Shown here in pieces: positions 18,246 to 46,185 of a stretch of DNA of 64,000 nt. The stretch is taken from positions 62,001 through 126,000 of the IMG/VR virus record IMGVR_UViG_3300023184_000026; one strand, written 5' to 3'. Position numbers and translations under genes: made by a program. A model generated the notes under the pieces. The model worked only from the letters and a program-made list of their open reading frames with translations. It had not been told where the DNA came from and made no database searches. The first letter of the stretch is position 1. Each line of letters starts with the position of its first letter.

Positions 18246-19433
18246 ATGAACAAAATTGTTACATTATTTTTGATGTTCTTTCTATGGAACAATGTTTATG
18301 GCGTTGTGGGTAAATTGACCGAGGTGACTGGTCCTACACAAGTTAGTAGGGCCAGTACCAAATTGGATGGTAAGATTGATGTGGGTATAGAAATAGATGA
18401 TACCATCGAAACTTTAAAATCGCGTGCTGGTATAACATTTGAAGATGGTACCAGAGTACAATGCACCGAGTTTAGCAAACTGGTTATAGATACGTTTGTG
18501 TATGATCCAAGTAGTGGAAAAGGAAAGCTCGCAATGAAAGCAACAATGGGAACGGTAAGATATGCTTCTGGATTGATTGCTAAAAATAATAAAGAAGAAG
18601 TAAAAGTAAAAACTCCCACGGCATCTATATCAGTACGTGGCACGGATTTTTCAATGACAGTTGATGAATTGGGCAGAAGTTTGGTTATTCTTTTACCATC
18701 CCAGCCACAATTTGGACCTTCCGTTGTTGGTCAGATAACAGTCAGCAATGGACTTGGAACAGTTGTATTGACCAAAGCATATCAGGCTACATTTGTAGCA
18801 TCAAGTTCTGTTGTACCATCTTCTCCAGTACTTTTAAATTTTGACGACGAAAGCAAAGTGAATAATATGTTGTTGATTGATACACCGAAAAATGTCACAC
18901 AAGCTGCAAAAGAAGCAAAGAAAGCATCTGTTGGTTCAGAAAAAGAAGATGATGGTGGTGAAGATAAAAATAAAAAGATGGAAAAGAAAGAAACAAAGTC
19001 CGAGAGTAAATCTGCTGCTACATCAGTCTCACAAGTTGAAGAAATTTCAACCGAATCTGCAACCGAAGCAACAAACTTACCTATCGTCGTGGTTCAAGAA
19101 AACATTGTCACAAAGCTTGATATAACTGCTATAAGTCCAAGCACCAATATTGCTGTTATGGATGCAATTGCAGAAAAACAATCTGTGCAACCAACATCAA
19201 TATCAATTATACCAATAGCACCAATTATATCTATACCAACTTCCACAGTAAATAATGGCTTTACAACGAACGGAACTCATGCTATATTGTATATAACCAA
19301 TGGAAATAATGTGGTTTGGTATACTCTAAAGGCTGATGCCAATGCTATATTCAATATAACTCAAAACACTGAATCAAAGGAATATCCATTGAATTTTGGT
19401 TCCAAACTTAAAGTTAATATAATTCAAAAATGA
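18246..19433 (+). CDS. FecR-domain protein
   Basis: Signal peptide; ITFEDGT, GTVRYASG, KTPTASISVRGTDF. Confidence 0.85.
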   Translation: MNKIVTLFLMFFLWNNVYGVVGKLTEVTGPTQVSRASTKLDGKIDVGIEIDDTIETLKSRAGITFEDGTRVQCTEFSKLVIDTFVYDPSSGKGKLAMKATMGTVRYASGLIAKNNKEEVKVKTPTASISVRGTDFSMTVDELGRSLVILLPSQPQFGPSVVGQITVSNGLGTVVLTKAYQATFVASSSVVPSSPVLLNFDDESKVNNMLLIDTPKNVTQAAKEAKKASVGSEKEDDGGEDKNKKMEKKETKSESKSAATSVSQVEEISTESATEATNLPIVVVQENIVTKLDITAISPSTNIAVMDAIAEKQSVQPTSISIIPIAPIISIPTSTVNNGFTTNGTHAILYITNGNNVVWYTLKADANAIFNITQNTESKEYPLNFGSKLKVNIIQK

Positions 19434-21205
19434 AATCTCATATTATTAAACTATTTGGCGTCGGTTTGCTGATATTAACCGCACTTGTTGTGCTACGCAT
19501 ACAAGATTCATATCCAATAGAAGTAATGCGGCTCAAGGGATTGGACTATTATCAACGCACGCAAGACAAAGTAAAAAGTGAAAATATCATTATTGTTGAA
19601 ATCGACGAAAAAAGTTTAGAAGAAAAAGGACAATGGCCGTGGCCAAGAAATGAACTGGCAGATGGTATAAAGAAGGCGTTTGAAAATGAAGCAGCCACTG
19701 TAGTATTGCCAATTATATTTGCAGAAAAAGATAGAATGGGTGGAGACGCAGTATTTGTGGAAATACTGGGAAAATCGCCTGTAATAACCGCACAATCTGC
19801 GGCGGTAAAGGGCAAAGGCGTGCCAGTACCAAGAGGTATGGCGACGATTGGCGGCAGTGCAGATGGATGGTTATATGATTATCCAAATGCAATCGGACCG
19901 ATAAAAGAAATAGGTGAATCGTCTGCTGGTGTGGGAATGTTATTGACGGCACCTGAACTTGATGGCGTGGTACGTCGCTTGCCGTTGGTTGTACAAGTAA
20001 AAAAAGAAACATATCCAACTTTACCTTTGGAAGTGTTGAGAGTGTTTGGAAATGAACCGAGCTATCAAGCAAAAATCAATGAAGCGGGCGTGCAAGCCAT
20101 AAGAGTAAAAGGCTCGGCCCCAATAAATACAGATGCTAGTGGTAGAGTATGGATAAACTTTAAATACAAGTTTGATAATATTTCATATACAGATAAAGAT
20201 TGGAGCAAAGTAAAGGGCAAGATTGTGGTTATAGCATTAACTGCTGAAGGATTAACAAACACAGTGGCAACTCCCGTAGGAACAGCATATGGACACGAAG
20301 TTAGTATGCAGACACTACAAATGTTGGTTGATGGAAATAGACTGGAACGCAAAGCGGAGTTTGATTTGTATGAGTTGGCAGTTGGAACATTGCTTGGATT
20401 GATTCTTGTAACATCCGCCGCATATCTTGGCTATGTTTATAATGGAATATTGGTAAAAGTGTCTGTGTCTGGGTGTATGTTTTTTGGATTTTATTTGTTC
20501 AAAAAGCATGGCTATTTGATTGATTATACTTGGCCGATTGTGGCAGCATTTTTACCGTGGGTTGGTGCAATATTTATGAGATTTGTGATGGAGTTCAAAT
20601 TGAAGATGCAAATCAAGAAGCAGTTTGGAACATATCTTTCTCCAGCACTGGTTGAAAAACTACAAAAAAATCCGGGCTTGCTCAAACTTGGTGGCGAATC
20701 CAAAGAACTAACTATATTATTTTCCGATATAAGAGGATATACTGCGTTGTCTGAGCATTTTGGGAAAGATGTGCAGGGGCTAACATCTCTCATTAACCGT
20801 TATATGGATGTTATGTTGCCTATAGTAATGAAAAATGAAGGCACTGTTGGAAAACTTATAGGGGACGCTGTAATGGCGTGGTGGTCGGCACCTATTCATG
20901 TAAAAGACCAAGCAACACTTGCAATAAAAGCCGCGCAGGAAATGAATATCGCATTGGTAAAACTCAACGAAGAATCAAAAGCACAAGGAATCCCAACTCT
21001 ATCAATCGGAATCGGAATAAATACAGGAGAAGTTGTTGTGGGAAATATGGGGTCAACGGAGCGATTTAGTTATGATATACTTGGTGACGCAGTGAATCTA
21101 GCGTCTCGCATAGAGGGTCAAACTAAAGAATATGGCGTGTTGATTATTTTGGGAGAAAATACTGTAAAAAAATACAAAAAAGAACAAGAAAATATGAAAA
21201 AATGA
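19430..21205 (+). CDS. CHASE2 + class III adenylate/guanylate cyclase, N-terminal part
   Basis: GQWPWPR, DGVVRR (CHASE2); TM helices; LFSDIRGYT, KLIGDAVM, GINTG, GDAVNLASRIEG. Confidence 0.92.
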   Translation: MKSHIIKLFGVGLLILTALVVLRIQDSYPIEVMRLKGLDYYQRTQDKVKSENIIIVEIDEKSLEEKGQWPWPRNELADGIKKAFENEAATVVLPIIFAEKDRMGGDAVFVEILGKSPVITAQSAAVKGKGVPVPRGMATIGGSADGWLYDYPNAIGPIKEIGESSAGVGMLLTAPELDGVVRRLPLVVQVKKETYPTLPLEVLRVFGNEPSYQAKINEAGVQAIRVKGSAPINTDASGRVWINFKYKFDNISYTDKDWSKVKGKIVVIALTAEGLTNTVATPVGTAYGHEVSMQTLQMLVDGNRLERKAEFDLYELAVGTLLGLILVTSAAYLGYVYNGILVKVSVSGCMFFGFYLFKKHGYLIDYTWPIVAAFLPWVGAIFMRFVMEFKLKMQIKKQFGTYLSPALVEKLQKNPGLLKLGGESKELTILFSDIRGYTALSEHFGKDVQGLTSLINRYMDVMLPIVMKNEGTVGKLIGDAVMAWWSAPIHVKDQATLAIKAAQEMNIALVKLNEESKAQGIPTLSIGIGINTGEVVVGNMGSTERFSYDILGDAVNLASRIEGQTKEYGVLIILGENTVKKYKKEQENMKK

Positions 21206-23498: not shown

Positions 23499-23816
23499 AT
23501 GGAAGATAAAGATATACTCGTTGAGTTTTTAAGAGGCGGATGGATTGTTGCTCTAATTGGAGCACTGGGTATGTTGGCAAGAACTTTCATGGATGGTGTA
23601 AAACGGTCTTGCACAGAACAAATCAAACGAATCATAGCAGCAGCAATATGTTCAACAATAGCATGGTTTATTTTAGAACAAGTAGAAGTAAGTAGCTTAA
23701 CAAAAGCAATCAGTTATGGCATAACTGGTGTGATAAGTCCGGAAATTCTTCAAGGTATAACAGTATTATCAAAGAAGTTTGCTAAAAAACCAGAAGATTT
23801 CTTAAAGAAAAAATAA
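23499..23816 (+). CDS. Small membrane protein (holin-like)
   Basis: 105 aa, three hydrophobic segments, basic C-terminus. Confidence 0.55.
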   Translation: MEDKDILVEFLRGGWIVALIGALGMLARTFMDGVKRSCTEQIKRIIAAAICSTIAWFILEQVEVSSLTKAISYGITGVISPEILQGITVLSKKFAKKPEDFLKKK

Positions 23817-23821
23817 TTTTT

Positions 23822-23897
23822 GCGGTAGTATCTCAGTTGGTAGAGAACGAGTTTTCCAAACTTGATGTCGCAGGTTCGATCCCTGTCTGCCGCTCCA
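23822..23897 (+). tRNA. tRNA-Gly(TCC)
   Basis: Cloverleaf, loop TTTCCAA, encoded CCA. Confidence 0.93.
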
Positions 23898-23954
23898 TTT
23901 GCAAACGCCACGTCATTGGCGAAATTGAGGTTGACTCAAATGACAATTTTAAAT

Positions 23955-24041
23955 GGGCAAGCGCCAAAGTTGGAGAGTTGGAGCAGACTGTAAATCTGTT
24001 GCCGTAAGGCTGAGTTGGTTCGAATCCGACCTTGCCCACCA
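23955..24041 (+). tRNA. tRNA-Tyr(GTA)
   Basis: Loop CTGTAAA, long variable arm, CCA. Confidence 0.93.
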
Positions 24042-24052
24042 TTTTAGAATAC

Positions 24053-24140
24053 GGAAAATTGGCAGAGTGGTCTAACGCAGGACTTTGCTAAAGTCCCGAT
24101 CCGAAAGGGTCCATAGGTTCGAATCCTATATTTTCCGCCA
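24053..24140 (+). tRNA. tRNA-Ser(GCT)
   Basis: Loop TTGCTAA, long variable arm, G73, CCA. Confidence 0.93.
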
Positions 24141-24151
24141 AATTTATATAC

Positions 24152-24226
24152 GCCGAATAAACATAAATGGTAATGTGCTAGTCTTGTAAATTAGATAAGC
24201 GGGTTCGATTCCCGCATTTGGCTCCA
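24152..24226 (+). tRNA. tRNA-Thr(TGT)
   Basis: Loop CTTGTAA, CCA. Confidence 0.88.
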
Positions 24227-24234
24227 CTTTATAT

Positions 24235-24310
24235 GCAGTAGTAGTTCAATGGTAGAATGCTTCGTTGCCAACGAAGAGGTCTGCGGGTTCAAGTCCCGCC
24301 TACTGCACCA
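24235..24310 (+). tRNA. tRNA-Gly(GCC)
   Basis: Loop TTGCCAA, CCA. Confidence 0.9.
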
Positions 24311-24320
24311 ATTTTTAAAT

Positions 24321-24396
24321 GCCGCGTGACATAGCTGGTTGTGATGACCCCTCTGCAAAAGGGAGGAGATTGGTTCGATTCCAATACGCGGTTCCA
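24321..24396 (+). tRNA. tRNA-Cys(GCA)
   Basis: Loop CTGCAAA, U73, CCA. Confidence 0.88.
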
Positions 24397-24399
24397 TTT

Positions 24400-24503
24400 T
24401 GTTGTGTAGCTCAGAGGTAGACCACTGACGGGATATGATGGTAAAAGACACCGAAAAAGTTCCCTATAAGCAGATGCCGATGGTTCGAATCCATCCATAA
24501 CAA
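24400..24503 (+). ncRNA. tRNA-like RNA with expanded anticodon arm
   Basis: Acceptor TGTTGTG/CATAACA, D arm, T arm GATGG-TTCGAAT-CCATC; extended insert replaces anticodon loop; no CCA. Confidence 0.6.
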
Positions 24504-24513
24504 ATAATTTTAT

Positions 24514-24591
24514 GGGCGTGTGACGTAACTGGATAACCGTGTTTCATTCAAAATGAAAATTCTGTGGGTTCGAGTCCCATCATGCCCACCA
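24514..24591 (+). tRNA. tRNA-Leu(CAA), short variable loop
   Basis: Stem TTTCA/TGAAA, loop TTCAAAA, 5-nt variable loop, A73, CCA. Confidence 0.75.
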
Positions 24592-24723
24592 ATTTTGATA
24601 GTGTATGTGTTTTCGTCTCTAAAATCTTACGGCACATGGAAGACGTGTAACGGGTTCAAAGTCCGACCACTTTGCATTGAGTAGAGTGAGTAAGCCAACC
24701 ATATACATTATCAAAATATTTTT

Positions 24724-24797
24724 GGACGATTGGTGAAAAAGTATCACTGCTGACTGAAGATCAATAATTCCGGTTGCAAGATCCGGGTCGTCCACCA
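24724..24797 (+). tRNA. tRNA-Phe(GAA), atypical T arm
   Basis: Loop CTGAAGA, acceptor GGACGAT/GTCGTCC, CCA. Confidence 0.75.
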
Positions 24798-24798
24798 T

Positions 24799-25128
24799 TT
24801 ATTTAAAATCAAATTCTTTTTTATATTCTAACACTGATGTTATATATGGGACGCTACCATCATCCTCGAATTGTCTGTATGTAAAATCTATTATAAAGTT
24901 TCCAACTTGAACAACTGTGTGTGGTAGTTTGTAAACTATATGTTTAACATCTACGGTCTTTGCTTGTGGAAATCCATTATTATTTAAGAAATCTGCCAGT
25001 GAATCTGATATTTCACAACACATTCCTTTTGACCACGTTGGTGCATGAATAATATTATAATAATCCTCCCCATCGGACTGTAACCAAGAAGTGCAAAGTT
25101 CATTTAAAAGTATTTCTGTTAGTTTCAT
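24799..25128 (-). CDS. Hypothetical protein
   Basis: 109-aa ORF, N-terminus MKLTEILLNE; GMC...H...D motif order suggests a papain/transglutaminase-like fold (inference). Confidence 0.6.
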   Translation of the reverse strand: MKLTEILLNELCTSWLQSDGEDYYNIIHAPTWSKGMCCEISDSLADFLNNNGFPQAKTVDVKHIVYKLPHTVVQVGNFIIDFTYRQFEDDGSVPYITSVLEYKKEFDFK

Positions 25129-25223
25129 AACATATACATATCCTAAATGTTATTTAATATCAAAAAGAAATATTTGAAAGTATCGGCGGCAATACATTTA
25201 AACTACCCGAAACACCATTTTAT

Positions 25224-25297
25224 TGAGATATATTGTAGTGGCAGCAAAAGAGTCTCTGAAACTCATAGCATTGGTTCGATTCCAATTATCTCATCCA
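25224..25297 (+). tRNA. tRNA-Gln(CTG)
   Basis: U1-A72, loop CTCTGAA, CCA. Confidence 0.85.
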
Positions 25298-25462
25298 TTT
25301 TATTATACAACAACTGCGGAGATAGTAATTCCAAAAAAGTTGTTACTGTATGAGTAGAAGATATCGTGAGTTAATTACTATGTCACGTGAAGCGAAAAAT
25401 ATAGGATAATATAAAGGTGAAGCCTCATCTTGAATGGGTTAAATTCCCAAAGGCATTTTTAC

Positions 25463-25538
25463 TGTCCCATAGCTCAGTTGGCAGAGCAAGAAACTGTTAA
25501 TTTCAAGGTCGCACGTTCGAGCCGTGCTGGGACAGCCA
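25463..25538 (+). tRNA. tRNA-Asn(GTT)
   Basis: Loop CTGTTAA, G73, CCA. Confidence 0.92.
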
Positions 25539-25544
25539 ATTTAT

Positions 25545-25617
25545 TGTGATGTAGTGTCAAAGTAGCACGGGCTCTGTTAAAGCTCTTGTCGTGGTGCGAG
25601 TCCACGCTTCACAGCCA
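25545..25617 (+). tRNA. tRNA-Asn(GTT), divergent second copy
   Basis: Loop CTGTTAA, T loop TGCGAGT, G73, CCA. Confidence 0.8.
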
Positions 25618-25623
25618 TTTTAC

Positions 25624-25698
25624 GGATCGCAAGCATATAAAGTGATGCTCTAGGCTCTTAACCTTGAGAACACGGGGCAGTACCGTGGCGGTCCACCA
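25624..25698 (+). tRNA. tRNA-Lys(CTT)
   Basis: Loop CTCTTAA, atypical T loop GGCAGTA, CCA. Confidence 0.8.
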
Positions 25699-25791
25699 AT
25701 TTCAAGCAAGAAGAGGCTGTTAAAGTCAGCATGGACATTACAAGATGCTAAATGGTGATAAGTGAATTCACATCTTACTTGAAAAATTTAT

Positions 25792-25870
25792 GGAACTAAA
25801 GCCACAGTGGACGGGCAGCGGTCTTTTAAACCGTTAATTCGTGTGGGTTCAACTCCCACTGGTTCCACCA
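25792..25870 (+). tRNA. tRNA-Lys(TTT)
   Basis: Loop CTTTTAA, CCA. Confidence 0.88.
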
Positions 25871-25876
25871 TTTTAT

Positions 25877-25959
25877 AGCAGAGACAAGCCAAGGGACGCT
25901 AACTGCGCTCATAACGCAGCCGAAAGGTATGATGTGTTCGATTCACATCTCTGCTTCCA
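25877..25959 (+). tRNA. tRNA with CAT anticodon and long variable arm
   Basis: CTGCG-CTCATAA-CGCAG; variable arm CCGAAAGG; acceptor AGCAGAG/CTCTGCT; CCA. Confidence 0.7.
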
Positions 25960-25966
25960 TTTTTAT

Positions 25967-26042
25967 CAGTGTGTGGTGCCAAAGGTTGGCGATTCCGCTT
26001 GGAACGGAAATTATGTAGGTTCGAGTCCTATCACACTGACCA
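25967..26042 (+). tRNA. tRNA-Pro(TGG)
   Basis: C1-G72, loop CTTGGAA, CCA. Confidence 0.87.
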
Positions 26043-26047
26043 TTTAT

Positions 26048-26124
26048 GCTTGTGTAGCTCAACTGGATAGAGCAACAGATTACGAATCTGTAGGTTGAAG
26101 GCTCGAATCCTTCCACATGCACCA
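26048..26124 (+). tRNA. tRNA-Arg(ACG)
   Basis: Loop TTACGAA, CCA. Confidence 0.9.
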
Positions 26125-26127
26125 TTT

Positions 26128-26224
26128 TGAACAGAAGCCTAGTTGTTCGTAAAACAGGAGTCGGTGTAATCATATTGATGTTTTTCAACAGGTAACCGTG
26201 CGCGGAATAATCGGGTGCTGTTCA
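26128..26224 (+). ncRNA. 97-nt structured element, copy 1
   Basis: Closed by TGAACAG/CTGTTCA; 3 differences from copy at 27079. Confidence 0.65.
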
Positions 26225-26230
26225 TTTTTT

Positions 26231-26305
26231 GGCCCTATAGAATAGAAGTTAGTTCGCCTGACTTTCAATCAGGAGATGTGGGAGCGTTACCCACTGGGGC
26301 TACCA
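26231..26305 (+). tRNA. tRNA-Glu(TTC)
   Basis: Loop CTTTCAA, atypical T loop AGCGTTA, CCA. Confidence 0.85.
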
Positions 26306-26308
26306 TTT

Positions 26309-26464
26309 TTGAGCGGCAGCGTGGAAGGACATGCAGCCTTGAGAAGTTCTATTACGCGCAGTATAGTGTACATAAAGCTGTGCCTCTGAAACGAAGCGAT
26401 GACTACCTAATAGATCGGGTCAGATTCAATGTCATCAATAGGTATCAATTCCTATCCGACTCAA
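26309..26464 (+). ncRNA. tRNA-like RNA with large central insert
   Basis: TTGAGCGG/CCGACTCAA ends, D-like GCGTGGAAGGACATGC, T-like ATAGG-TATCAATT-CCTAT. Confidence 0.5.
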
Positions 26465-26731
26465 ATTAATTTTGAATAGCAGCTCGGAGTGTAGGAAAGT
26501 TTTTTCCTTTCCGGTACGAGCATGGGGTCTAACCATCAGCGGAAAAATAAGCAACGAAAAGCCTCTGGGTTCATAACAATATGTTAAATGGAAAAATAAT
26601 AACATGTTGGAATTTATGCGTAAATAAGAAACTCGCTATAGTGTAGCTATATAAAGCAAAACTACACCTATTCAATTAATTTTATGAGTTATAATAAAGT
26701 TTTGATATAATATATATAGTATATATTATAT

Positions 26732-26974
26732 ATGAACATATCACCAATACAATCATCGGCTGAAACAAATAGTTCACCAGTAAACATTCAAGCTGCGGCT
26801 AAAATATATAGTAAAAATAGTCCAGTATCACTTAGTACAAATGCATCTGGATTTTTTGCAAATGCTGAAGCTGATGTTGTGCATGATCTTAAAAAAGCTT
26901 TGATGGCTGCAATAAATTGTGGAGATTTTGACAAAGCTATACATATTTTAAAATGTTTAAAAGAACTGGGATAA
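26732..26974 (+). CDS. Hypothetical protein
   Basis: 80-aa ATG ORF in tRNA array. Confidence 0.55.
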   Translation: MNISPIQSSAETNSSPVNIQAAAKIYSKNSPVSLSTNASGFFANAEADVVHDLKKALMAAINCGDFDKAIHILKCLKELG

Positions 26975-27078
26975 TAATATATAAACAATTTACAGAGAGT
27001 TAAGGGCACTGCTACCAGAATATCGTGGTAGGTTCACGTAGCGTAATAACCACACATGGCTAAACACTCTCTAATATT

Positions 27079-27175
27079 TGAACAGAAGTCTAGTTGTTTG
27101 TAAAACAGGAGTCGGTGTAATCATATTGATGTTTTTCAACAGGCAACCGTGCGCGGAATAATCGGGTGCTGTTCA
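27079..27175 (+). ncRNA. 97-nt structured element, copy 2
   Basis: Near-identical direct repeat of 26128-26224. Confidence 0.65.
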
Positions 27176-27179
27176 TTTT

Positions 27180-27253
27180 TGGGATATGGTGTAATGGTAA
27201 CACAGACGACTTTGACTCGTCTATTCATGGTTCGAGTCCATGTATCCCAGCCA
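27180..27253 (+). tRNA. tRNA-Gln(TTG)
   Basis: U1-A72, loop CTTTGAC, G73, CCA. Confidence 0.92.
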
Positions 27254-27314
27254 TTATATAGTTGATGGGTTATATATACTCTTCATTTTTGTGTATTAGT
27301 ATATTTATAAAAGT

Positions 27315-27515
27315 ATGAGCGACATGACATCAAATAATTTGATTATACGCAGAATGATTGATAAGAAAACATCTTATACAGCAATCTTTTTGAAAGGAGA
27401 ACGACCAAGAATTTTTCCTACAGATGATTATGAACATGCTCGTATTTTACAAATATACAAGCAAGATAGAAAATATGAAGGTATAATAAACGATTTTAAT
27501 GATTTTGATTTGTAA
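27315..27515 (+). CDS. Hypothetical protein
   Basis: 66-aa ORF preceded by TATTTATA motif. Confidence 0.55.
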   Translation: MSDMTSNNLIIRRMIDKKTSYTAIFLKGERPRIFPTDDYEHARILQIYKQDRKYEGIINDFNDFDL

Positions 27516-27518
27516 TAT

Positions 27519-27596
27519 GGTAGAGAAGCACAAGTAGTTATATGCTCTCGTTTGATAGACGAAGGATAGTGAGTGCAAGTCTCACCTCTACCACCA
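27519..27596 (+). tRNA. tRNA-Ile(GAT)
   Basis: Loop TTGATAG, T loop TGCAAGT, CCA. Confidence 0.8.
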
Positions 27597-27811
27597 TATA
27601 GCCCGAATCATCCCTCTCTTATGTAAAAATAATGATGGACTCAATCTGAAACTACAGATGATGACACATGACGATGTGTCTAGGGCAATCTTTTATATAT
27701 GCGAATTTTAATTACGGCGAATCTGCCATAATTAAACAAAGGAAAAAAAGAATCAATAACACTTGACATTTTGTTAGAAAATATTAGAGTTTTGATAGAT
27801 AGATATTTTAT

Positions 27812-27887
27812 GGGCTAGTATCTCAGTTGGTAGAGAAGCTGCTTTGCAAGCAGAAGGTCGCAGGTTCGATCCCTGTCTGGTCCACCA
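27812..27887 (+). tRNA. tRNA-Ala(TGC)
   Basis: G3:U70, loop TTTGCAA, CCA. Confidence 0.93.
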
Positions 27888-27893
27888 TTTTAT

Positions 27894-27969
27894 ACCGAGT
27901 TAGCACAGTGGCTAATGCACTTCGTTTACATCGAAGCTATCAGGGGTTCGAGTCCCTTACTCGGTACCA
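27894..27969 (+). tRNA. tRNA-Val(TAC)
   Basis: Loop TTTACAT, CCA. Confidence 0.9.
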
Positions 27970-27997
27970 TTTCAATTGTTCTATATACTTATAGTAT

Positions 27998-28390
27998 ATG
28001 ATTAAATTAAAAGATTTATTGCCAGAATCACCATTTGCAGTGTTTGTTTTAGCCAAAGCAAATGATGGATATGCAGCCACAACTCGTGCAGCAGACCGAA
28101 ATGAACAAGGAAAAATTGGATTGCCCGGCGGAAAAGTTGATATTGGTGAATCACCAGTTCAAGCAGCAACAAGAGAATCTAATGAAGAAGGATGGCAAGT
28201 TGATATAACAAATACAACACCTATTCATAAACAATTAGTTGATGGAAAAATGGTATATTGGTATGCAGGAGAAAATGCAGTAAAGTTAAATAATTTTAAA
28301 GAAAAAGGTAGAATAACTCCCATAGTTGCAACTATTGAACAAATTTTATCTTCTGGTTACGGAAATGAAAATCTAAAACACTTAGTATAA
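27998..28390 (+). CDS. NUDIX hydrolase
   Basis: Nudix box LPGGKVDIGESPVQAATRESNEEG. Confidence 0.9.
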   Translation: MIKLKDLLPESPFAVFVLAKANDGYAATTRAADRNEQGKIGLPGGKVDIGESPVQAATRESNEEGWQVDITNTTPIHKQLVDGKMVYWYAGENAVKLNNFKEKGRITPIVATIEQILSSGYGNENLKHLV

Positions 28391-28634
28391 CAAGTGCTTG
28401 AAACGTGTTCGTTCATATGCTTTCGTGAAAGTATATCAACAGAAGCAGTGTATTGGTTCAATCGTTAGTTCTTTTGCGTAAAAAGACATTTTTAGCATAC
28501 GGAGGGTAGCCCCTTGGTGGTGACGATATACCTTATCACGTCAATTATTTATATGCTTGACACATAACAAATATTGTTCATTATGACGTGAGAAATGAGA
28601 TGCAATAATGCAAATCATTTCATACACACACAAA

Positions 28635-28859
28635 ATGAAAGATACAAATACACAAAAGACGGGTAAAAATGGTTATGAAATTAGATTGGAAATTCTTGGA
28701 CTAGCAATGGGACAAGCAGACTCAGCTTATTTCAACCAACTTGAGCGACTTCGCCATGTTGCGGGTGATAAAGGAACATGGGAATTGCCAAAAGATAATC
28801 GTGTAGATGAAGCAATGCAAATTGCTGAAAAACTCTACAAGTTTGTTGAGAATAAGTAA
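28635..28859 (+). CDS. Hypothetical protein
   Basis: NGYEIRLEIL...AEKLYKFV small ORF. Confidence 0.6.
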   Translation: MKDTNTQKTGKNGYEIRLEILGLAMGQADSAYFNQLERLRHVAGDKGTWELPKDNRVDEAMQIAEKLYKFVENK

Positions 28860-28913
28860 CAGTTATATCTTGGTGTAACAGATATAAACTAGTGTATTTG
28901 ATTACACCATTAT

Positions 28914-28991
28914 ACAGGTGTAGCGTAACTTGGTTATCGCGTCTGGTTTGGGACCAGAAGACTGTGGGCTCAAATCCCACCACCTGTACCA
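28914..28991 (+). tRNA. tRNA-Pro(TGG), second copy
   Basis: TCTGG-TTTGGGA-CCAGA, CCA. Confidence 0.88.
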
Positions 28992-28999
28992 ATTTTTAT

Positions 29000-29075
29000 G
29001 GCGTTTATAGTGTAGTGGTTCGCACACAAGTTTGTGAAACTTGAAGGACGATTTAGAATATCGTTAGACGCCCCA
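29000..29075 (+). tRNA. tRNA-His(GTG)
   Basis: G-1:C73, loop TTGTGAA, CCA. Confidence 0.85.
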
Positions 29076-29086
29076 ATTTTATTTAT

Positions 29087-29163
29087 AGGTGGGTCGCATA
29101 ATTGGTATTGCAGCAGTCTCCAAAACTGCCACCATGTGGGTTCGAGTCCCACCCCACCTGCCA
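29087..29163 (+). tRNA. tRNA-Trp(CCA)
   Basis: Loop CTCCAAA, G73, CCA. Confidence 0.92.
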
Positions 29164-29464
29164 TTTATTTCAATATAGTATAAAGAATATACAATAATTT
29201 ATTAACATAATAATCGCAATGATGTGTATATATTTAAAGATATGTCAAAGAAAAAAACATCTAAGAAAATTAAACGAGTATCAATGAAAGAAATTGTTGA
29301 TGCATTTTATTCAGGAATTTCGCCAACTAAAATAGGTAAAATGGCAAAACAACTTGTAAAACAACAAGATGCCAGAAATTATTGATGTTAGTTTTTATAA
29401 CAACAAAAACAAAGTTTTAGAAGATAGTTATGTTGTGTATATACAACAACCAAAATAAAATCAT

Positions 29465-31678: not shown

Positions 31679-33652
31679 ATGAAATATAATAACACACAAA
31701 ATAACTCGCTGCTTGTGAAGCTCTTTGCTTCTATGATGCTGTTTGTGGTCGCTGTGACCAGTGTATTTGCCATTCCCGGCATTACATCCACAAACCTACA
31801 AACAACTGCGGGTGTAACAGTTACAGATGCAGGTACTACTCTTAGTATCGTCGCCCCAAACAAGTCTGTGCTTACATGGCAGAACTTTGGAAGTGGCACG
31901 GATACTATTGCTATTGGAGACGCACTAAACTATACACTTCCTTCCAATAATGCATCTGTATTAAACATTGTTGCTGGTGGAGCATCCTCAACCATCAACG
32001 GTACACTTTCATCTAACGGCAATGTATATGTCCTCAATCCAAACGGCATCTTGGTCGGTGGCAGTGCTCGAATTGATGTCAATCGTTTGGGCTTGAGCAC
32101 ATCCGACAATCCATCATTTGCTAGTTTTTATTTCCAGCAAAATGGATTTCTTCCGTCTCAAGACGGGTTGGCTCCTGTCGCTGGTAATACAACCATCAAT
32201 AATGGTTCAATCATTGCAGTAAGCGAAAACATTACTCTTGTTTCCAAGAATATCACAATCAACGGTGTATTGTCTCAAGGAAATCTTGTGCTCAATGCTG
32301 ATGGTAATGTTACTGTGGGTTCTGCTGGTATGGCTTATATCGCTGGCAATTTGACTATCAACAATCCAACAGGAACAACTACAATTGGTTCTGCTGGCAA
32401 CAACACAATTATCACCAATAACCTAGTGGTCAATGGAAATTCTACAAGCGCGTTTTCTTCGGTTGCCACTGGTACAATACAAGCCAAGACGTTAAATGTA
32501 ACAGCTGGAACAATTCTGGCCGATCGTATCAGCACAAACAGCACAACTGTCAATGGCACAAATGTCACTGTTAATGTTGGTTCTGGTGCTGGCACGCCTT
32601 CTGTTACCGCAGTTGGCAATGGCACAGTACAAATATCCGCACCTGCGTCTCTTACTGTTAATGTCAGCAACTCTGGTGCTGGTGCAACCACCGTATCTGC
32701 TGGTGGTAATTTGACACTGGGTAAGGTACAAGTAGAAGGTTTGGCTGGTGCTTCATTTACTGGTGCATCTGTGACTGACACTTCGTCCAGAATATTTGTT
32801 TATGGCGGTGCTGCGTTCACTGCAACTGCTGGGAATGTTACTATCGACAAAGGACAACACAGTTTTGGTCCAGTTAGCGTATCTGCTACTGGCGAAGCCT
32901 TGATTGTTGAAGACGCAGCCACACAGTTGAACGTTGTCAACACACCAAAGTTGACATTGCGTTCTGTTGATTATATTTTTCAAACTCCAACAACTGGTGT
33001 AGTTAATAGTGCATTGGTTTCTGTTGTGGGTTCTGGAAATATAACACTTGGTGCAGTCACAAACTCCGCTGGAAATTACACAATCACCGGAAACGATGTT
33101 GTGTTTGCCAACAACGGTGCATTGTCTATATCCACGACCGCAACTGGCAACGCTTCTGTTATATCAACGGGCGCAGTGACTCTCGGCTCAATAGCCACGG
33201 GTGGCACACTAACAGTTACTTCTGCTGGAGCAATCACTCAAGCAGTTGATACCAAAGTCAGTTCGTTTGGATCTGTTCGTTTTGTTGGAACTGGATTGAC
33301 ACTATCAAATGCTGGCAACGGCTTTGGTGGCATCACAGTTGATGTTGGTACTGCCGGTACTGCCACACTCACAGAAGAAACAACTCTAAACCTCGTTTCT
33401 CTTCGCGCTGCGAATGCAACATTGAAAAGTACATTCGATGTTATTACAACTGGTGCATTGCCGGTAGTCGCTGATACATTCAATGTTGTTGTTGGTGGGG
33501 ATTTTGTTCCTGCTGCAAACTTCCGCGCCGTCAATGGTATTACAGTATTGTCTGGTGGAAATGTTGACTTGAGCAATTTGAGTTTGATCACAAACTTGAA
33601 TAACAAGAGCCCAAGCATCATTGCCAAAGGATACAAGGCTCCACAGCCATAA
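31679..33652 (+). CDS. Filamentous-haemagglutinin-like (TPS domain) secreted protein
   Basis: Signal peptide; VLTWQNF, STINGTLSSNGNVYVLNPNGIL; T/G/N/V-rich beta-helical repeats. Confidence 0.85.
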   Translation: MKYNNTQNNSLLVKLFASMMLFVVAVTSVFAIPGITSTNLQTTAGVTVTDAGTTLSIVAPNKSVLTWQNFGSGTDTIAIGDALNYTLPSNNASVLNIVAGGASSTINGTLSSNGNVYVLNPNGILVGGSARIDVNRLGLSTSDNPSFASFYFQQNGFLPSQDGLAPVAGNTTINNGSIIAVSENITLVSKNITINGVLSQGNLVLNADGNVTVGSAGMAYIAGNLTINNPTGTTTIGSAGNNTIITNNLVVNGNSTSAFSSVATGTIQAKTLNVTAGTILADRISTNSTTVNGTNVTVNVGSGAGTPSVTAVGNGTVQISAPASLTVNVSNSGAGATTVSAGGNLTLGKVQVEGLAGASFTGASVTDTSSRIFVYGGAAFTATAGNVTIDKGQHSFGPVSVSATGEALIVEDAATQLNVVNTPKLTLRSVDYIFQTPTTGVVNSALVSVVGSGNITLGAVTNSAGNYTITGNDVVFANNGALSISTTATGNASVISTGAVTLGSIATGGTLTVTSAGAITQAVDTKVSSFGSVRFVGTGLTLSNAGNGFGGITVDVGTAGTATLTEETTLNLVSLRAANATLKSTFDVITTGALPVVADTFNVVVGGDFVPAANFRAVNGITVLSGGNVDLSNLSLITNLNNKSPSIIAKGYKAPQP

Positions 33653-35096: not shown

Positions 35097-35753
35097 ATGG
35101 CAAAAAAGAGCAAAGTTAAACCAACTGATATAATAAATAGTCCTTTGTTTGCTGGAGTGCCGCCAAAATTTGTAAAAAAAGCGGCTACTTTTTGTGAAGT
35201 AAAAGAGTATAGTGCTGGTTCATTTATAATAAATGAAGGTGAAAAAGGAGACTTTATGTTTATTATACTTGATGGTCAAGTGGATGTATTAAAAGGACCA
35301 AAGAAGATGAAATTAGCCACACTTGGCAAAGGTGTATTTTTGGGAGAAGGTGCATTGGTTAGTAGATCACCAAGAAATGCAAGTATTGTCGCAAAGAGTA
35401 GTGTTAAACTTGCTGTATTTGATCAAAATGGATTTGATAAATTATCTGTTATGCATCCATGTATTCCTGTAACAATGATGAATATACACAACGAAAGATG
35501 CAAAGATACAGTGCGTAAACTCAATATATTAAAATCAAAAGAATTTATATTGATGGCAGCAGTTGGATTGGTGTTGCTTGTAAAAAATTCACATAGTATA
35601 CTTCCAATGAATTTACATGATATTGCAGATCAAATTGCAAGCTATATTCCAGATCAAGTTATGGCATTGGGTGGCCCAGCAGCAGCAGCAATTGGATTGA
35701 AATTAAAACAAATGGAAATGGGTGATATAGTTTCTAAATTAGACAAGATTTGA
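35097..35753 (+). CDS. Cyclic-nucleotide-binding protein with C-terminal hydrophobic segments
   Basis: EGEKGD.MFIILDGQV, FLGEGALV..PRNASIVA phosphate-binding cassette. Confidence 0.85.
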   Translation: MAKKSKVKPTDIINSPLFAGVPPKFVKKAATFCEVKEYSAGSFIINEGEKGDFMFIILDGQVDVLKGPKKMKLATLGKGVFLGEGALVSRSPRNASIVAKSSVKLAVFDQNGFDKLSVMHPCIPVTMMNIHNERCKDTVRKLNILKSKEFILMAAVGLVLLVKNSHSILPMNLHDIADQIASYIPDQVMALGGPAAAAIGLKLKQMEMGDIVSKLDKI

Positions 35754-38428: not shown

Positions 38429-38503
38429 ATGCTCATTGCTATAGCATGTTACGCTGTTCTTGGCTTGATTGTCATTGCGGACGGCGATTATAACAGAAAA
38501 TAA
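38429..38503 (+). CDS. 24-aa hydrophobic peptide
   Basis: MLIAIACYAVLGLIVIADGDYNRK*; AAAGGA upstream; own promoter and terminator. Confidence 0.4.
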   Translation: MLIAIACYAVLGLIVIADGDYNRK

Positions 38504-38516
38504 ACAGAAAATCATA

Positions 38517-38548
38517 AGAGGGTGGACGAAAAATCCACCCTCTTTTTT
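38517..38548 (+). terminator. Intrinsic terminator
   Basis: AGAGGGTGGA...TCCACCCTCTTTTTT. Confidence 0.85.
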
Positions 38549-38570
38549 GTGCTTGTATATATTTATAAGC

Positions 38571-39425
38571 ATGATAAAATTGAAAGACATATTGGCAGAA
38601 GCCAAACTATACTCTTATTCTATAAAAGAAGTATTAGAGAAGTTTCTACAGTTTGATGGAAAAACAATGATACTGTTTGATACAGAAACAGTTGGTTTGG
38701 AGCCAAACACTTCATATATTCAACTCACACATATTGCTGCAATTGCATATGAAGGTTCTTCACTAAAAGAAATTGGAGAGTTTTCCAAAAAGGTAAATAT
38801 TGGTTCTGCTTTGAACAATGCATTGAATGATCCAAATAGTACAGAAGCAAAGCAGTTGAATAAAGAAATGAATAGAAGATTGAAAAAATATGGCAAGCCA
38901 GACTTGCATCCAAGAGATGCATTAAAAATGACTGGTTATGAAAATCCAAACGCAGAAAAGTTGGATGAAAAAGAAGCATTGATTCAATTTGAAAAATTCT
39001 TGAGTCAATTTGATAATGTTGTGATACTTGCTCACAATGCTACATTTGATATGAAATTCATTGAGGCTCGTAGAAAATTAAATGGATTGCCGCCAACAAA
39101 AAGATATCCAGTATTAGACACAGTAAACATATCACGATTTTTCTTTATACCAGCAATGCAAGCACTTGAAACAATACCAGAAGTTAAAACTATATTGGAT
39201 GGTTTGCTTGCCAAGACAAAATATAAAAGTTATAGTTCAAGTCTTGGAAAACTTGGTGCGGTGTTGGGAGTTAAAGTTGATGGTTGGCATGATGCTAAAG
39301 AAGATGTAAAAATGCTTATGCAAGTGCTTCAAAAAATGATTGAATTTCTGAAAGCAAACTCAACAACAGATATAAAAAAATATATAGCACCAGCAGCAAA
39401 AAGATTTCGGCAATCAAAATTCTAA
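38571..39425 (+). CDS. DEDDh 3'-5' exonuclease (DnaQ-like)
   Basis: FDTETVG, AHNATFD, LDT, HDAKED. Confidence 0.88.
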   Translation: MIKLKDILAEAKLYSYSIKEVLEKFLQFDGKTMILFDTETVGLEPNTSYIQLTHIAAIAYEGSSLKEIGEFSKKVNIGSALNNALNDPNSTEAKQLNKEMNRRLKKYGKPDLHPRDALKMTGYENPNAEKLDEKEALIQFEKFLSQFDNVVILAHNATFDMKFIEARRKLNGLPPTKRYPVLDTVNISRFFFIPAMQALETIPEVKTILDGLLAKTKYKSYSSSLGKLGAVLGVKVDGWHDAKEDVKMLMQVLQKMIEFLKANSTTDIKKYIAPAAKRFRQSKF

Positions 39426-41406: not shown

Positions 41407-42897
41407 ATGAAACAATCAAGAAGAAGCTTTCTAGGCTTAGGAGCAATGGGATTACTTGGATTGAATATGCAAGGGGCTGAAAAAAAGCCTCTTGAATTTT
41501 GCAATCCAAATGACGTGCCACAATTTGTGTTTGGCAATGAACCAATGAGAACTCGCAAGAGTTTTTATGATCTAACCGATGAAGAACTACAGACATTATG
41601 CAAGGCTGTAGATTATATGCGTAACAAGCTTCCACGTGAAGCGCCAACAAGTTGGGAGACATATACTCGCATACACTACAAACACTGCACTGCGTTTGAT
41701 GCTGACCATCCACAAGTTCATTGGGGTGATCATTTTCTTCCTTGGCACCGTGGTTATTTATTTTTCCTCGAACGCTTGTTGGGAAATTCTTTGAATCAAC
41801 TGGGTCTTGATGGTAACAAGTTTGCTTTTCCATATTGGGATTGGATCAACCACAAAGAAATGCCAAATACAAAATTCCGTGAGTTGAAGGGGCTAGGGAG
41901 TCCATTGTTTGGTTATGACCTAATACAACAAAATATGGTGGCTGGCGACAATCTTGGTTTTGATAATCTTGCGTTATACGATGGAAACCGTGGTCCTACA
42001 CTTGAAAAGAGTAAAATAGACCCCGCCAACGAAACGCAGCAAGATTCTAAAGATCACGTCGCCGAATGCCTTGGTTATATGAGCAAAGAGTATGTTGACT
42101 TGATGCTGACTACTCCTTGGGAGCAATTTGGAGGAAAGCCCGGTATTGATCGTAAGACTGGTCAAGGATTGGTTGAAGCCGGTGCCCACAATGACGGTCA
42201 CGACTGGGTTGGAACAAGATATGGATGCAACAGAACAATGGGTACGCTGCGCTATGCCGCAGACGATCCTATTTTCTTTATGCACCACTGCAACTTGGAT
42301 AGAATATTCTCGTTGTATAAGAATCCAATCCCAGATATCAATGGACCATGGGGCCAACAAAGATATGTGTTCCCTGATTTGAATGGTTCGCCCGTAAGCG
42401 TATCGGTCAAAGATATTATGCTATGGACTCAAACGGTATCATATCAAGCACCGCAAACAAGCAAAGCGAAGCTAGGTGCATCTAAAGCATTAAAGAATGC
42501 TGCGTCTGTTACGATTCCTGTAAACAAATCGACGGTATCTAAAGCAGGGTTGAGTGTTTCAATTGAGCCTTCTGTAAGCCTGAAAAACTTGATCAATAAA
42601 GGTCTTGAGTCTGGTACATCAATTCTTGAAATTGAAACCGGACCAATATCTCATGCTGGCCGCGCCACGATCAAAGTTTATATTGGTAAAAAATATATAG
42701 GAAGAATCAAGATAATGGACGGAGATCCAAGCACAACAAATCCAGACGCTTCGCATACATTTGTGATGACACTTGGACAATTGGGTAAGATTTCCGAGGC
42801 AATTCCAGTTGCGTATAAATTCGATGTGAATTTTTATGCGTATGGCATAAGCCAAGATGTGCTAATAAGAAACTTAAAGTTCAGTGTAATGAAATAA
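41407..42897 (+). CDS. Tat-exported tyrosinase/polyphenol oxidase
   Basis: SRRSFLG twin-arginine; CuA H..HC...QVHW..HFLPWHRGYL; CuB HNDGH...DPIFFMHHCNLDR. Confidence 0.9.
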   Translation: MKQSRRSFLGLGAMGLLGLNMQGAEKKPLEFCNPNDVPQFVFGNEPMRTRKSFYDLTDEELQTLCKAVDYMRNKLPREAPTSWETYTRIHYKHCTAFDADHPQVHWGDHFLPWHRGYLFFLERLLGNSLNQLGLDGNKFAFPYWDWINHKEMPNTKFRELKGLGSPLFGYDLIQQNMVAGDNLGFDNLALYDGNRGPTLEKSKIDPANETQQDSKDHVAECLGYMSKEYVDLMLTTPWEQFGGKPGIDRKTGQGLVEAGAHNDGHDWVGTRYGCNRTMGTLRYAADDPIFFMHHCNLDRIFSLYKNPIPDINGPWGQQRYVFPDLNGSPVSVSVKDIMLWTQTVSYQAPQTSKAKLGASKALKNAASVTIPVNKSTVSKAGLSVSIEPSVSLKNLINKGLESGTSILEIETGPISHAGRATIKVYIGKKYIGRIKIMDGDPSTTNPDASHTFVMTLGQLGKISEAIPVAYKFDVNFYAYGISQDVLIRNLKFSVMK

Positions 42898-45794: not shown

Positions 45795-46185
45795 GGGCGT
45801 GTTATGGATTCTACTTTATAATGTAGGTTTAAGCCGCAAGCACAGAGTCTAATGTCTCTGTATAATACCCGTTGGAAAACATAAATGCTAAGAGAAATCT
45901 TGCAAAGGTGTCTTTTCTTTCTGTTCGCAAGAACAGCGGAGCCGAGACACTTGTCGCAGCCTAATAAAATAGGCTGTCCGTTGTCCTTGTGACACAGATA
46001 ACAAGTCAACAACGTTCATCATCTGGCCGTTTGTGCAAGATAGAAGATGGTAGCACAAATCAAATACTAAACTTCAACTTCAATGTGGTGCTCTACCAAA
46101 CATTGATGTATTATAAGAGATAAGCTTGTATATGTTTAGATGTATGTTATATAGCACGCGGATTCGACTTCCGCCACGTCCACCA
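45795..46185 (+). ncRNA. ssrA: tmRNA
   Basis: 5' GGGCGTG..GGATTCTAC; G3:U70 acceptor, T arm and ACCA end; tag ORF 45887-45964 (A)AKRNLAKVSFLSVRKNSGAETLVAA*. Confidence 0.92.

What the first reader, a model, noticed from the sequence alone, without database searches (positions are those of the whole stretch)
26128..27175. Duplicated 97-nt structured RNA among tRNAs
Seen: two copies (26128-26224, 27079-27175) differing at 3 positions, each closed by a 7-bp acceptor-like stem (TGAACAG/CTGTTCA) with internal TGTT/AACA, CGGT/ACCG and TTGA/TCAA helices, each directly followed by a T-run and a tRNA. No anticodon, T-loop or CCA. Inference: a processed ncRNA of unknown class (decoy or tRNA mimic) or a small mobile RNA unit.
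Basis: partly seen in the sequence, partly recalled or inferred. Interest (0 to 1): 0.65.

Follow-up and report, generated by a model that had tools for sequence, protein, structure and literature searches.

The report
Conserved small RNA in phage tRNA arrays
A 97-base structured RNA gene with no known family sits like a tRNA, in two copies, inside the tRNA array of a large uncultured lake phage; it recurs in other T4-like phages, and its function is as unknown as that of phage T4's old "species 1 and 2" RNAs.

Summary
Two 97-nt copies (26128-26224, 27079-27175) differ at 3 positions. Each lies on the tRNA strand, 3-6 nt from its neighbours. The window is part of a 297-kb T4-like virus record with 30 tRNAs and a tmRNA.

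The element is not a tRNA, and no Rfam family matches it even at E<=10. It is a real family. About 23 other viral contigs and further lake and marine metagenome contigs carry it, always inside tRNA arrays and often beside tRNA-Arg(ACG). Some carriers have a DNA polymerase only 32% identical to the window's.

Fifteen sequence variants support a 7-bp terminal stem and a long bulged arm by paired changes. They also fit an invariant 3' hairpin and two invariant cores, which cannot be tested. The RNAalifold fold and a rod-like fold do not fit the key changes.

No homologue turned up in 50,697 GenBank phage records, one genome each of 185,579 prokaryote species, or T4 rnaC/rnaD.

Best reading: a new family of co-transcribed stable small RNA, cut out like a tRNA, that acts in trans through its invariant cores. 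Its partner is unknown. The mobile-unit and artefact readings are not supported.

The parts
26128..26224 (+). Copy A of the 97-nt element (variant with C11, C21, U66)
   Evidence: CM R2 118.8 bits
27079..27175 (+). Copy B of the 97-nt element (the majority sequence among relatives)
   Evidence: CM R2 118.8 bits
26128..26134 (+). P1 5' strand of copy A (element positions 1-7), pairs with 26218-26224. In copy B: 27079-27085 with 27169-27175.
   Evidence: Two adjacent pairs change on both sides (A-U to G-C, C-G to U-A) in 5 of 15 variants; one A-U to G-U change
26137..26145 (+). 5' strand of the long arm in copy A: P2a (positions 10-13), bulged invariant A14, P2b (positions 15-18). Pairs with 26186-26193 (positions 59-66).
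   Evidence: Pair 16:61 is U-A, C-G or U-G; 10:66 is G-U, G-C or A-U; 11:65 is C-G, U-G or U-A
26150..26167 (+). Invariant core A (positions 23-40, UAAAACAGGAGUCGGUGU) of copy A. In copy B: 27101-27118.
   Evidence: Invariant in all 15 variants
26168..26176 (+). Variable apical hairpin of the long arm (positions 41-49) in copy A
   Evidence: Three pairs with changes on both sides, and some mismatches
26194..26216 (+). Invariant core B with the 3' hairpin (positions 67-89) of copy A. In copy B: 27145-27167.
   Evidence: Only positions 75 (G/U) and 81 (U/C) vary. The pairing is untestable because nothing covaries.
26048..26124 (+). tRNA-Arg(ACG), 3 nt upstream of copy A; a frequent neighbour of the element in relatives
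26231..26305 (+). tRNA-Glu(UUC), 6 nt downstream of copy A
26994..27072 (+). Second, unrelated structured RNA (the 'U-element', 79 nt, 7-bp closing stem AGAGAGU/ACUCUCU), 6 nt upstream of copy B and of many homologues
   Evidence: hairpin with covarying pairs in 12 variants
27180..27253 (+). tRNA-Gln(UUG), 4 nt downstream of copy B

Best explanation
The element is a gene for a small structured RNA of a previously undescribed family, carried in the tRNA arrays of T4-like phages of lakes, with at least one marine read.

Proposed mechanism. It is transcribed as part of the polycistronic tRNA precursor. Its 7-bp terminal stem, with the 3' hairpin stacked on it, offers the tRNA-processing enzymes the same handle as an acceptor/T-arm stack: RNase P at the 5' side, and 3' endo- or exonucleases in the U-rich spacer. 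A discrete RNA of about 97 nt is therefore released like a tRNA. The released RNA then acts in trans through its two invariant, largely unpaired cores. Core A is UAAAACAGGAGUCGGUGU, in the middle of the long arm. Core B is AACCGUGC-N-CGGAAYAAUCGG, in the 3' hairpin. The cores most likely bind a protein or a ribonucleoprotein of the host or the phage.

Status of each step. Shown: the gene family, its strand, its fixed place in tRNA slots, its partial secondary structure and its selective constraint. Inferred: co-transcription, excision and action in trans. Unknown: the partner.

The confidence of 0.6 is for the whole chain. That it is a selected structured RNA gene I put at about 0.85, excision like a tRNA at about 0.6, and a protein-binding role in trans at about 0.3.
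For: 1. The copies and their spacing are tRNA-like: gaps of 3-6 nt against 5-11 nt between tRNAs.
2. There is no excess of promoter- or terminator-like sites, and no room for a promoter before copy A.
3. Homologues occur on about 23 other IMG/VR contigs and in 17 metagenome matches, some of them on those same contigs. All checked ones lie inside tRNA arrays on the tRNA strand, with U-rich spacers. The neighbours differ: Arg-X-Glu, Arg-X-Leu, Tyr-X-Arg, X-Thr, X-Gln.
4. Carriers include phages whose family-B polymerase is only 32% identical to the window's, while the element stays about 80% identical.
5. On 15 distinct variants the refined structure has 97.1% of cells paired and 6 pairs changed on both sides. 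Its covariation score is 0.212, against at most 0.072 for slid controls and 0 of 500 shuffles.
6. Many G-U pairs exist only on the + strand.
7. A second, unrelated RNA next to it (26994-27072) also closes with exactly 7 bp.
8. There is no conserved reading frame. The T/C difference at position 66 turns a stop codon into a sense codon (direct reading).
Against: The metatranscriptome runs hold only 7-15% of the sampled words of the 2.6-kb stretch, which could be the tRNAs. So expression, ends and stability are unproven.

The variants come from few lineages. The double changes amount to perhaps 8-9 independent events, and unbiased column-pair scans show many spurious correlations.

Two other folds also score over 92% paired. 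The 3' hairpin and both cores are invariant, so their pairing is untested.

The 3' hairpin has no T-loop and there is no CCA, so recognition by RNase P is an analogy.

No partner was found. There is no antisense target of 13 nt or more in the phage genome, no special duplex with any array tRNA, and no rRNA likeness above chance.
Confidence: 0.6

Rival explanations
1. It is a cis-acting element of the array rather than a trans-acting RNA. It could be a punctuation or processing module that guides cleavage of neighbouring tRNAs, or a structure that modulates transcription through the array, and is then degraded.
For: It is always within a few nt of tRNAs. The terminal stem is followed by a U-run. 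It is often beside tRNA-Arg(ACG).
Against: The neighbouring tRNAs change (Glu, Gln, Leu, Thr, Arg, Tyr) while the internal cores stay invariant. A mere spacer or handle would not need 40 invariant internal bases. No terminator-like site was scored. Every tRNA in the array is followed by the same U-run.
Confidence: 0.12
2. It is a decayed tRNA gene (pseudogene or relic) that is carried along with the array and has no function of its own.
For: It has a 7-bp terminal stem, a 2-nt AA linker and a 4-bp helix starting at position 10, followed by A14 G15 U16 U17 G18, which recalls a D-arm (direct reading). It occupies a tRNA slot.
Against: The tRNA model and ARAGORN find nothing even at lax settings. 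The sequence is held at about 80% identity between phages whose polymerases share 32%, with compensatory changes and invariant cores unlike any tRNA part. A relic would decay.
Confidence: 0.07
3. It is a small mobile unit (at the DNA or RNA level) that inserts itself into tRNA arrays.
For: There are two copies in one genome. Neighbours vary. Distribution is patchy: closer polymerase relatives (57-79% identity) have tRNA-Glu but no element at that slot, while distant phages carry it.
Against: There are no terminal repeats, target-site duplications or associated transposase, endonuclease or RT gene. The borders coincide with ordinary array spacers. Only one copy was found in each other carrier contig or record that was scanned. 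The relatives lacking it are fragments 13-64% complete. Recombination between arrays explains the pattern.
Confidence: 0.07
4. It is a ribozyme or a ligand-binding aptamer: invariant core, variable peripheral helices.
For: The conservation pattern is an invariant junction and loops with covarying outer helices.
Against: No Rfam ribozyme or riboswitch model matches at E<=10. The 5' and 3' ends pair with each other, unlike the HDV-like topology. The junctions lack the hammerhead core (direct reading). No gene lies downstream that it could regulate.
Confidence: 0.06
5. The duplication is an assembly artefact.
For: The contig is from a metagenome, and repeats can be mis-joined.
Against: The copies differ at 3 sites and have different flanks. 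Both contexts are seen on independent contigs. Runs from other samples hold 96-98% of the stretch's sampled words.
Confidence: 0.01

Closest known systems
Phage T4 small stable RNAs rnaC (species 1) and rnaD (species 2)
   Same: They are non-tRNA RNAs of 119-139 nt inside the tRNA cluster of a T4-type phage, on the tRNA strand, 1-6 nt from their neighbours, directly after tRNA-Arg, and annotated only as small stable RNAs. That their function is still unknown is from my own knowledge.
   Different: No sequence or structure likeness. Model R2 run without filters does not match them. rnaC carries a canonical GGTTCGAATCC T-arm, which the element lacks.
tRNA (Rfam RF00005)
   Same: A 7-bp terminal stem, a 2-nt linker, a helix starting at position 10, and the same spacing and U-rich spacers as the array's tRNAs.
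   Different: No anticodon arm, no T-loop, no CCA, 97 nt long. No hit from the tRNA model or ARAGORN.
GOLLD and ROOL RNAs
   Same: Structured RNAs of unknown function encoded by phages and prophages, often near tRNA islands (bioRxiv 10.1101/2024.12.08.627333).
   Different: They are 500-800+ nt ornate multimeric RNAs. Their Rfam models do not match here. The element is 97 nt and sits in a tRNA slot.
Known non-coding RNAs of T4-like cyanophages (CfrI, PhotoRC-II, wcaG, glutamine riboswitch)
   Same: Non-coding RNAs carried by aquatic T4-like phages (PMC9964418).
   Different: According to that paper these are found by searching Rfam. No Rfam family matched the element at E<=10. None of them is described there as sitting in a tRNA slot.
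tRNA-like processing modules (bacterial Y-RNA-like YrlA; eukaryotic mascRNA and plant mitochondrial t-elements)
   Same: RNAs that use a tRNA-like terminal helix to be cut by tRNA-processing enzymes. This is the way the element is proposed to work.
   Different: YrlA (RF02553) did not match the element. The others are recalled from memory and belong to other kingdoms. Membership is not claimed.

Membership tests
tRNA (RF00005) | Cloverleaf scoring at least 29 bits with the Rfam model, or detection by ARAGORN | tested here: not met
   No hit over 26128-26224 or 27079-27175 at gathering score or at E<=10. ARAGORN finds nothing, including intron mode and thresholds lowered to 70-80%.
tRNA (RF00005) | Anticodon loop, T-loop, and a 3' discriminator plus CCA (encoded in most other tRNAs of this array) | tested here: not met
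   Direct reading. The apical loop varies (AAUC, CAUC, UAUC, UGUC, UAAC). The 3' end runs straight into a U-run.
T4 rnaC / rnaD | Homology in sequence and structure to the T4 species 1 or 2 RNA | tested here: not met
   cmsearch with R2, filters off, on the T4 tRNA region: best overlap 4.8 bits, E 8.4.
T4 rnaC / rnaD | Location inside the tRNA cluster, same strand, a few nt from tRNAs | tested here: met
GOLLD / ROOL / other Rfam phage RNAs, ribozymes, riboswitches, tmRNA | Match to the family's covariance model | tested here: not met
   4227 Rfam models gave nothing on the element at E<=10.
Intrinsic terminator | G+C-rich hairpin immediately followed by a T-run | tested here: not met
   0 terminator-like sites in 23500-26690 and 26750-29300.
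tRNA-like processing substrate (a way of working, not a family) | Conserved terminal helix of tRNA acceptor length with covariation | tested here: met
   7 bp, two pairs changed on both sides, 99% of cells paired.
tRNA-like processing substrate (a way of working, not a family) | Discrete 5' and 3' ends of the RNA at the helix | not testable with these tools

The most novel reading that the evidence does not exclude
The element is the first recognised member of a class of phage RNAs that ride the tRNA-processing pathway and act as a decoy or sponge. Its invariant loops would titrate a host factor during infection. Candidates are a translation or RNA-processing protein, a GGA-binding regulator, or a tRNA-directed defence nuclease. 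This would also hint at what T4's species 1 and 2 RNAs are for.
Probability: 0.12. Interest if true: 0.8.

Novelty: new member of a known kind. Interest (0 to 1): 0.5.

Why it matters
Large phages carry tRNA arrays, and non-tRNA RNAs have been known inside them since the T4 species 1 and 2 RNAs. To my knowledge none has an established function.

This element is a compact, well-delimited example for three reasons:
- It has a testable structure.
- Its invariant cores point to a specific partner.
- It occurs in T4-like lineages whose polymerases share only 32% identity.

It also has a second unrelated companion RNA with the same 7-bp closing stem. This suggests that riding the tRNA-processing pathway may be a more general way for phages to make small RNAs. 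Annotators should note that such slots are genes, not spacers.

Tried and rejected
1. Fold used for model R1. The RNAalifold fold (15-23 with 61-69) and a rod-like fold (10-21 with 78-89) both score over 92% paired. However, they are broken by the C16/A19 variants, while the 15-18 with 59-62 register gains a U-A to C-G change.
2. Mimic of the 16S rRNA 3' end (h44/h45), suggested by AACAGGUAACCGU. Local alignment to the E. coli rrn operon scores no better than 130 of 300 shuffles. Rejected.
3. Intron-containing or degenerate tRNA. ARAGORN finds nothing.
4. Homology to T4 rnaC/rnaD. None.
5. Antisense targets in the phage genome. Only AT-rich 11-12-mers were found, none in the cores.
6. Pairing with tRNA-Arg or any other array RNA. 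Nothing stands out.
7. Host origin. The pattern scan of one genome per 185,579 prokaryote species gave 96 stretches. None of the 80 that were listed and scanned passed the model.
8. Cultured phages. No hit in 50,697 GenBank records, even at E<=10.
9. Chance pattern hits, set aside because they lie in coding DNA or are not in tRNA arrays: L048, L127, L132, L136, L238, L240, L248.
11. K-turn, small-ORF, CsrA-site and RNase P-RNA likenesses. Considered by eye only; none is kept across the variants or testable here.
12. Tools and options not used. The large protein searches, structure prediction and complex prediction were not used, because the finding is an RNA. No alternative genetic code was used.

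Full report
WHAT IS THERE

The window is bases 62001-126000 of a 297,258-bp IMG/VR virus record rated complete. It encodes a family-B DNA polymerase of the T4 type. The best named relative is Microcystis phage Mel-JY01 at 42.5% amino-acid identity. It carries 30 tRNA genes and a tmRNA, all on the + strand.

- They lie at 26128-26224 and 27079-27175 and are 97 nt each.
- They differ at element positions 11, 21 and 66.
- The whole record holds only these two.

Copy A starts 3 nt after the CCA of tRNA-Arg(ACG) and ends 6 nt before tRNA-Glu. Copy B ends 4 nt before tRNA-Gln. It is preceded, after 6 nt, by another structured RNA at 26994-27072. Gaps between adjacent tRNAs in this array are 5-11 nt, so the element fills a tRNA slot.

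It is not a tRNA. ARAGORN finds nothing even with introns allowed and thresholds lowered. Rfam's 4227 models give no hit at gathering score or at E<=10. Single-sequence folding is unremarkable (z about -1.6). No excess of promoter- or terminator-like sites surrounds it.

RELATIVES

Pattern scans of IMG/VR, followed by covariance-model searches, found the element on about 23 further viral contigs. One scan of metagenome contigs added 17 matches from lake water and one marine read. Some of these are the same contigs as the IMG/VR ones.

Fifteen distinct full-length variants were aligned (A6). They fall into four groups:
- the window's group, 96-100% identical;
- two groups at about 80% identity (L047, L046, L086);
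- a group from T4-like phages of roughly 140-170 kb (L128-L135).

The polymerase of that last group is only 32% identical to the window's.

Wherever the flanks were checked, the element lies inside a tRNA array on the tRNA strand, with U-rich spacers of a few bases. The neighbours vary: Arg-X-Glu, Arg-X-Leu, Tyr-X-Arg(ACG), X-Thr, X-Gln.

Closer polymerase relatives (57-79% identity) have the tRNA-Glu but something else upstream of it, and no match to either model. These contigs are fragments, so absence is not proven.

Nothing was found in:
- 50,697 GenBank phage records;
- one genome for each of 185,579 prokaryote species, where the 80 pattern hits that were scanned all failed the model;
- the T4 tRNA region.

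DNA runs from several lake studies hold the stretch. One independent sample holds 96% of its sampled words. Together with the independent contigs for each context, this rules out an assembly artefact.

STRUCTURE

The first automatic fold did not survive the wider alignment.

The terminal stem (1-7 with 91-97) is firm. UGAACAG/CUGUUCA becomes UGAGUAG/CUACUCA in five variants, which is two adjacent pairs changed on both sides. One variant has A-U changed to G-U.

The long arm is best described in four parts:
- Positions 10-13 pair with 63-66. Pair 10:66 is G-U, G-C or A-U. Pair 11:65 is C-G, U-G or U-A.
- A14 is an invariant bulge.
- Positions 15-18 pair with 59-62. Pair 16:61 is U-A, C-G, or U-G in a partial sequence.
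- A variable extension follows, then an invariant AACA/UGUU pairing (26-29 with 52-55) and a variable apical hairpin (41-43 with 47-49) whose three pairs all show double changes alongside some mismatches.

The 3' part (72-90) can form a hairpin that stacks on the terminal stem. It is almost invariant, so it can be neither supported nor refuted.

On A6 this model gives:
- 97.1% of cells paired;
- 6 pairs with changes on both sides (24 of 500 shuffles reach this);
- 19 such cells (0 of 500 shuffles);
- a covariation score of 0.212, against at most 0.072 when partners are slid.

The RNAalifold fold and a rod-like fold also pair well, but they are broken by exactly those variants that show the compensatory change in the favoured register.

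Caveat: the variants stem from few lineages. The double changes are perhaps eight or nine events, and an unbiased scan of column pairs shows many spurious correlations. The many G-U pairs fix the + strand as the RNA strand.

Two stretches never vary. One is UAAAACAGGAGUCGGUGU (23-40). The other is AACCGUGC-N-CGGAAYAAUCGG (67-88), apart from positions 75 and 81.

HOW IT MOST LIKELY WORKS

No promoter can fit in the 3 nt before copy A, and the spacing matches that of tRNAs. The element is therefore inferred to be part of the array's precursor transcript.

A conserved helix of exactly acceptor-stem length, U at the position before it in all flanks read, and a hairpin abutting its 3' strand give the tRNA-processing enzymes a tRNA-like handle. 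The unrelated neighbouring RNA at 26994-27072 also closes with exactly 7 bp and has a covarying hairpin. This suggests a general way of making small RNAs in these arrays.

The invariant, mostly unpaired cores then suggest a sequence-specific partner. None was identified:
- no antisense target of 13 nt or more in the phage genome;
- no outstanding duplex with any array tRNA, the tmRNA or the neighbouring RNA;
- a resemblance to the 3' end of 16S rRNA is no better than chance.

Binding of a protein or ribonucleoprotein is thus the leading guess, and only a guess.

Expression and ends could not be examined. 

COMPARISON WITH WHAT IS KNOWN

The nearest known kind is the pair of small stable RNAs in the T4 tRNA cluster, rnaD and rnaC. 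They follow tRNA-Arg within 1-6 nt and are annotated only as small stable RNAs. The element works like them in placement, but it is not homologous.

GOLLD and ROOL are phage RNAs often near tRNA islands with unknown function, but they are far larger and do not match.

The non-coding RNAs known from T4-like cyanophages (CfrI, PhotoRC-II, wcaG, glutamine riboswitch; PMC9964418) are found through Rfam searches, and no Rfam family matched the element.

I therefore file it as a new member of a known kind: non-tRNA RNAs embedded in phage tRNA clusters.

VERDICT

Interest is moderate (0.5).

NEIGHBOURHOOD

Pfam matches near the array are a NUDIX protein (27998-28390), a cNMP-binding protein (35097-35753) and an RNase T-like exonuclease (38469-39425). 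The small ORFs beside copy B have no family.

Noticed in passing
window 26994-27072 (+): A second conserved structured RNA of 79 nt with a 7-bp closing stem (AGAGAGU/ACUCUCU) and a hairpin whose pairs covary among 12 variants. It lies 6 nt upstream of copy B and of many homologues. It has no Rfam match.
   Followed up: partly
window 25624-25699 (+): A tRNA-like gene missed by ARAGORN and Rfam: a 7-bp acceptor stem, an anticodon-loop-like CUCUUAA (CUU, Lys), an odd T-loop, and an ending in CCACCA. The fold is better than shuffles (z -2.35).
   Followed up: partly
window 27518-27596 (+): Another undetected tRNA-like RNA with an acceptor-like stem and a T-arm-like hairpin, ending in CCACCA (fold z -3.1, 1 of 200 shuffles as good).
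   Followed up: no
window 26306-26470 (+): A non-coding stretch of about 160 nt after tRNA-Glu whose ends can pair (UGAGCGG ... CCGACUCA). The fold is no better than shuffles. It may be a further array RNA or just spacer.
   Followed up: no
window 45795-46185 (+): A phage-encoded tmRNA (Rfam 94 bits). The distant carriers of the element also encode one (L134).
   Followed up: no
window 18246-21205 (+) and 35097-35753 (+): Signalling genes unusual for a phage: a FecR-domain protein, a CHASE2 sensor fused to an adenylate/guanylate cyclase domain, and, inside the tRNA region, a cyclic-nucleotide-binding protein.
   Followed up: no
window 31679-33652 (+) and 41407-42897 (+): A 657-aa protein with a two-partner-secretion (TPS) domain and DUF5649 repeats lies within the tRNA region. 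A tyrosinase-domain protein lies further on.
   Followed up: no
window 38469-39425 (+): An RNase T/DnaQ-like 3'-5' exonuclease gene lies just after the last tRNA of the array. It could be a 3'-end trimming enzyme or a dexA-like DNA exonuclease.
   Followed up: no
L005 (contig of 23,187 nt) versus window: A phage whose polymerase match is 77% identical to the window's carries a tRNA-Arg/element/tRNA-Glu block nearly identical to the window's. The tRNA region seems to move between lineages as a module.
   Followed up: partly
L010 8515-8591: A related phage array of 32 tRNAs in 13 kb includes a gene ARAGORN calls tRNA-SeC(UCA), a possible opal suppressor.
   Followed up: no
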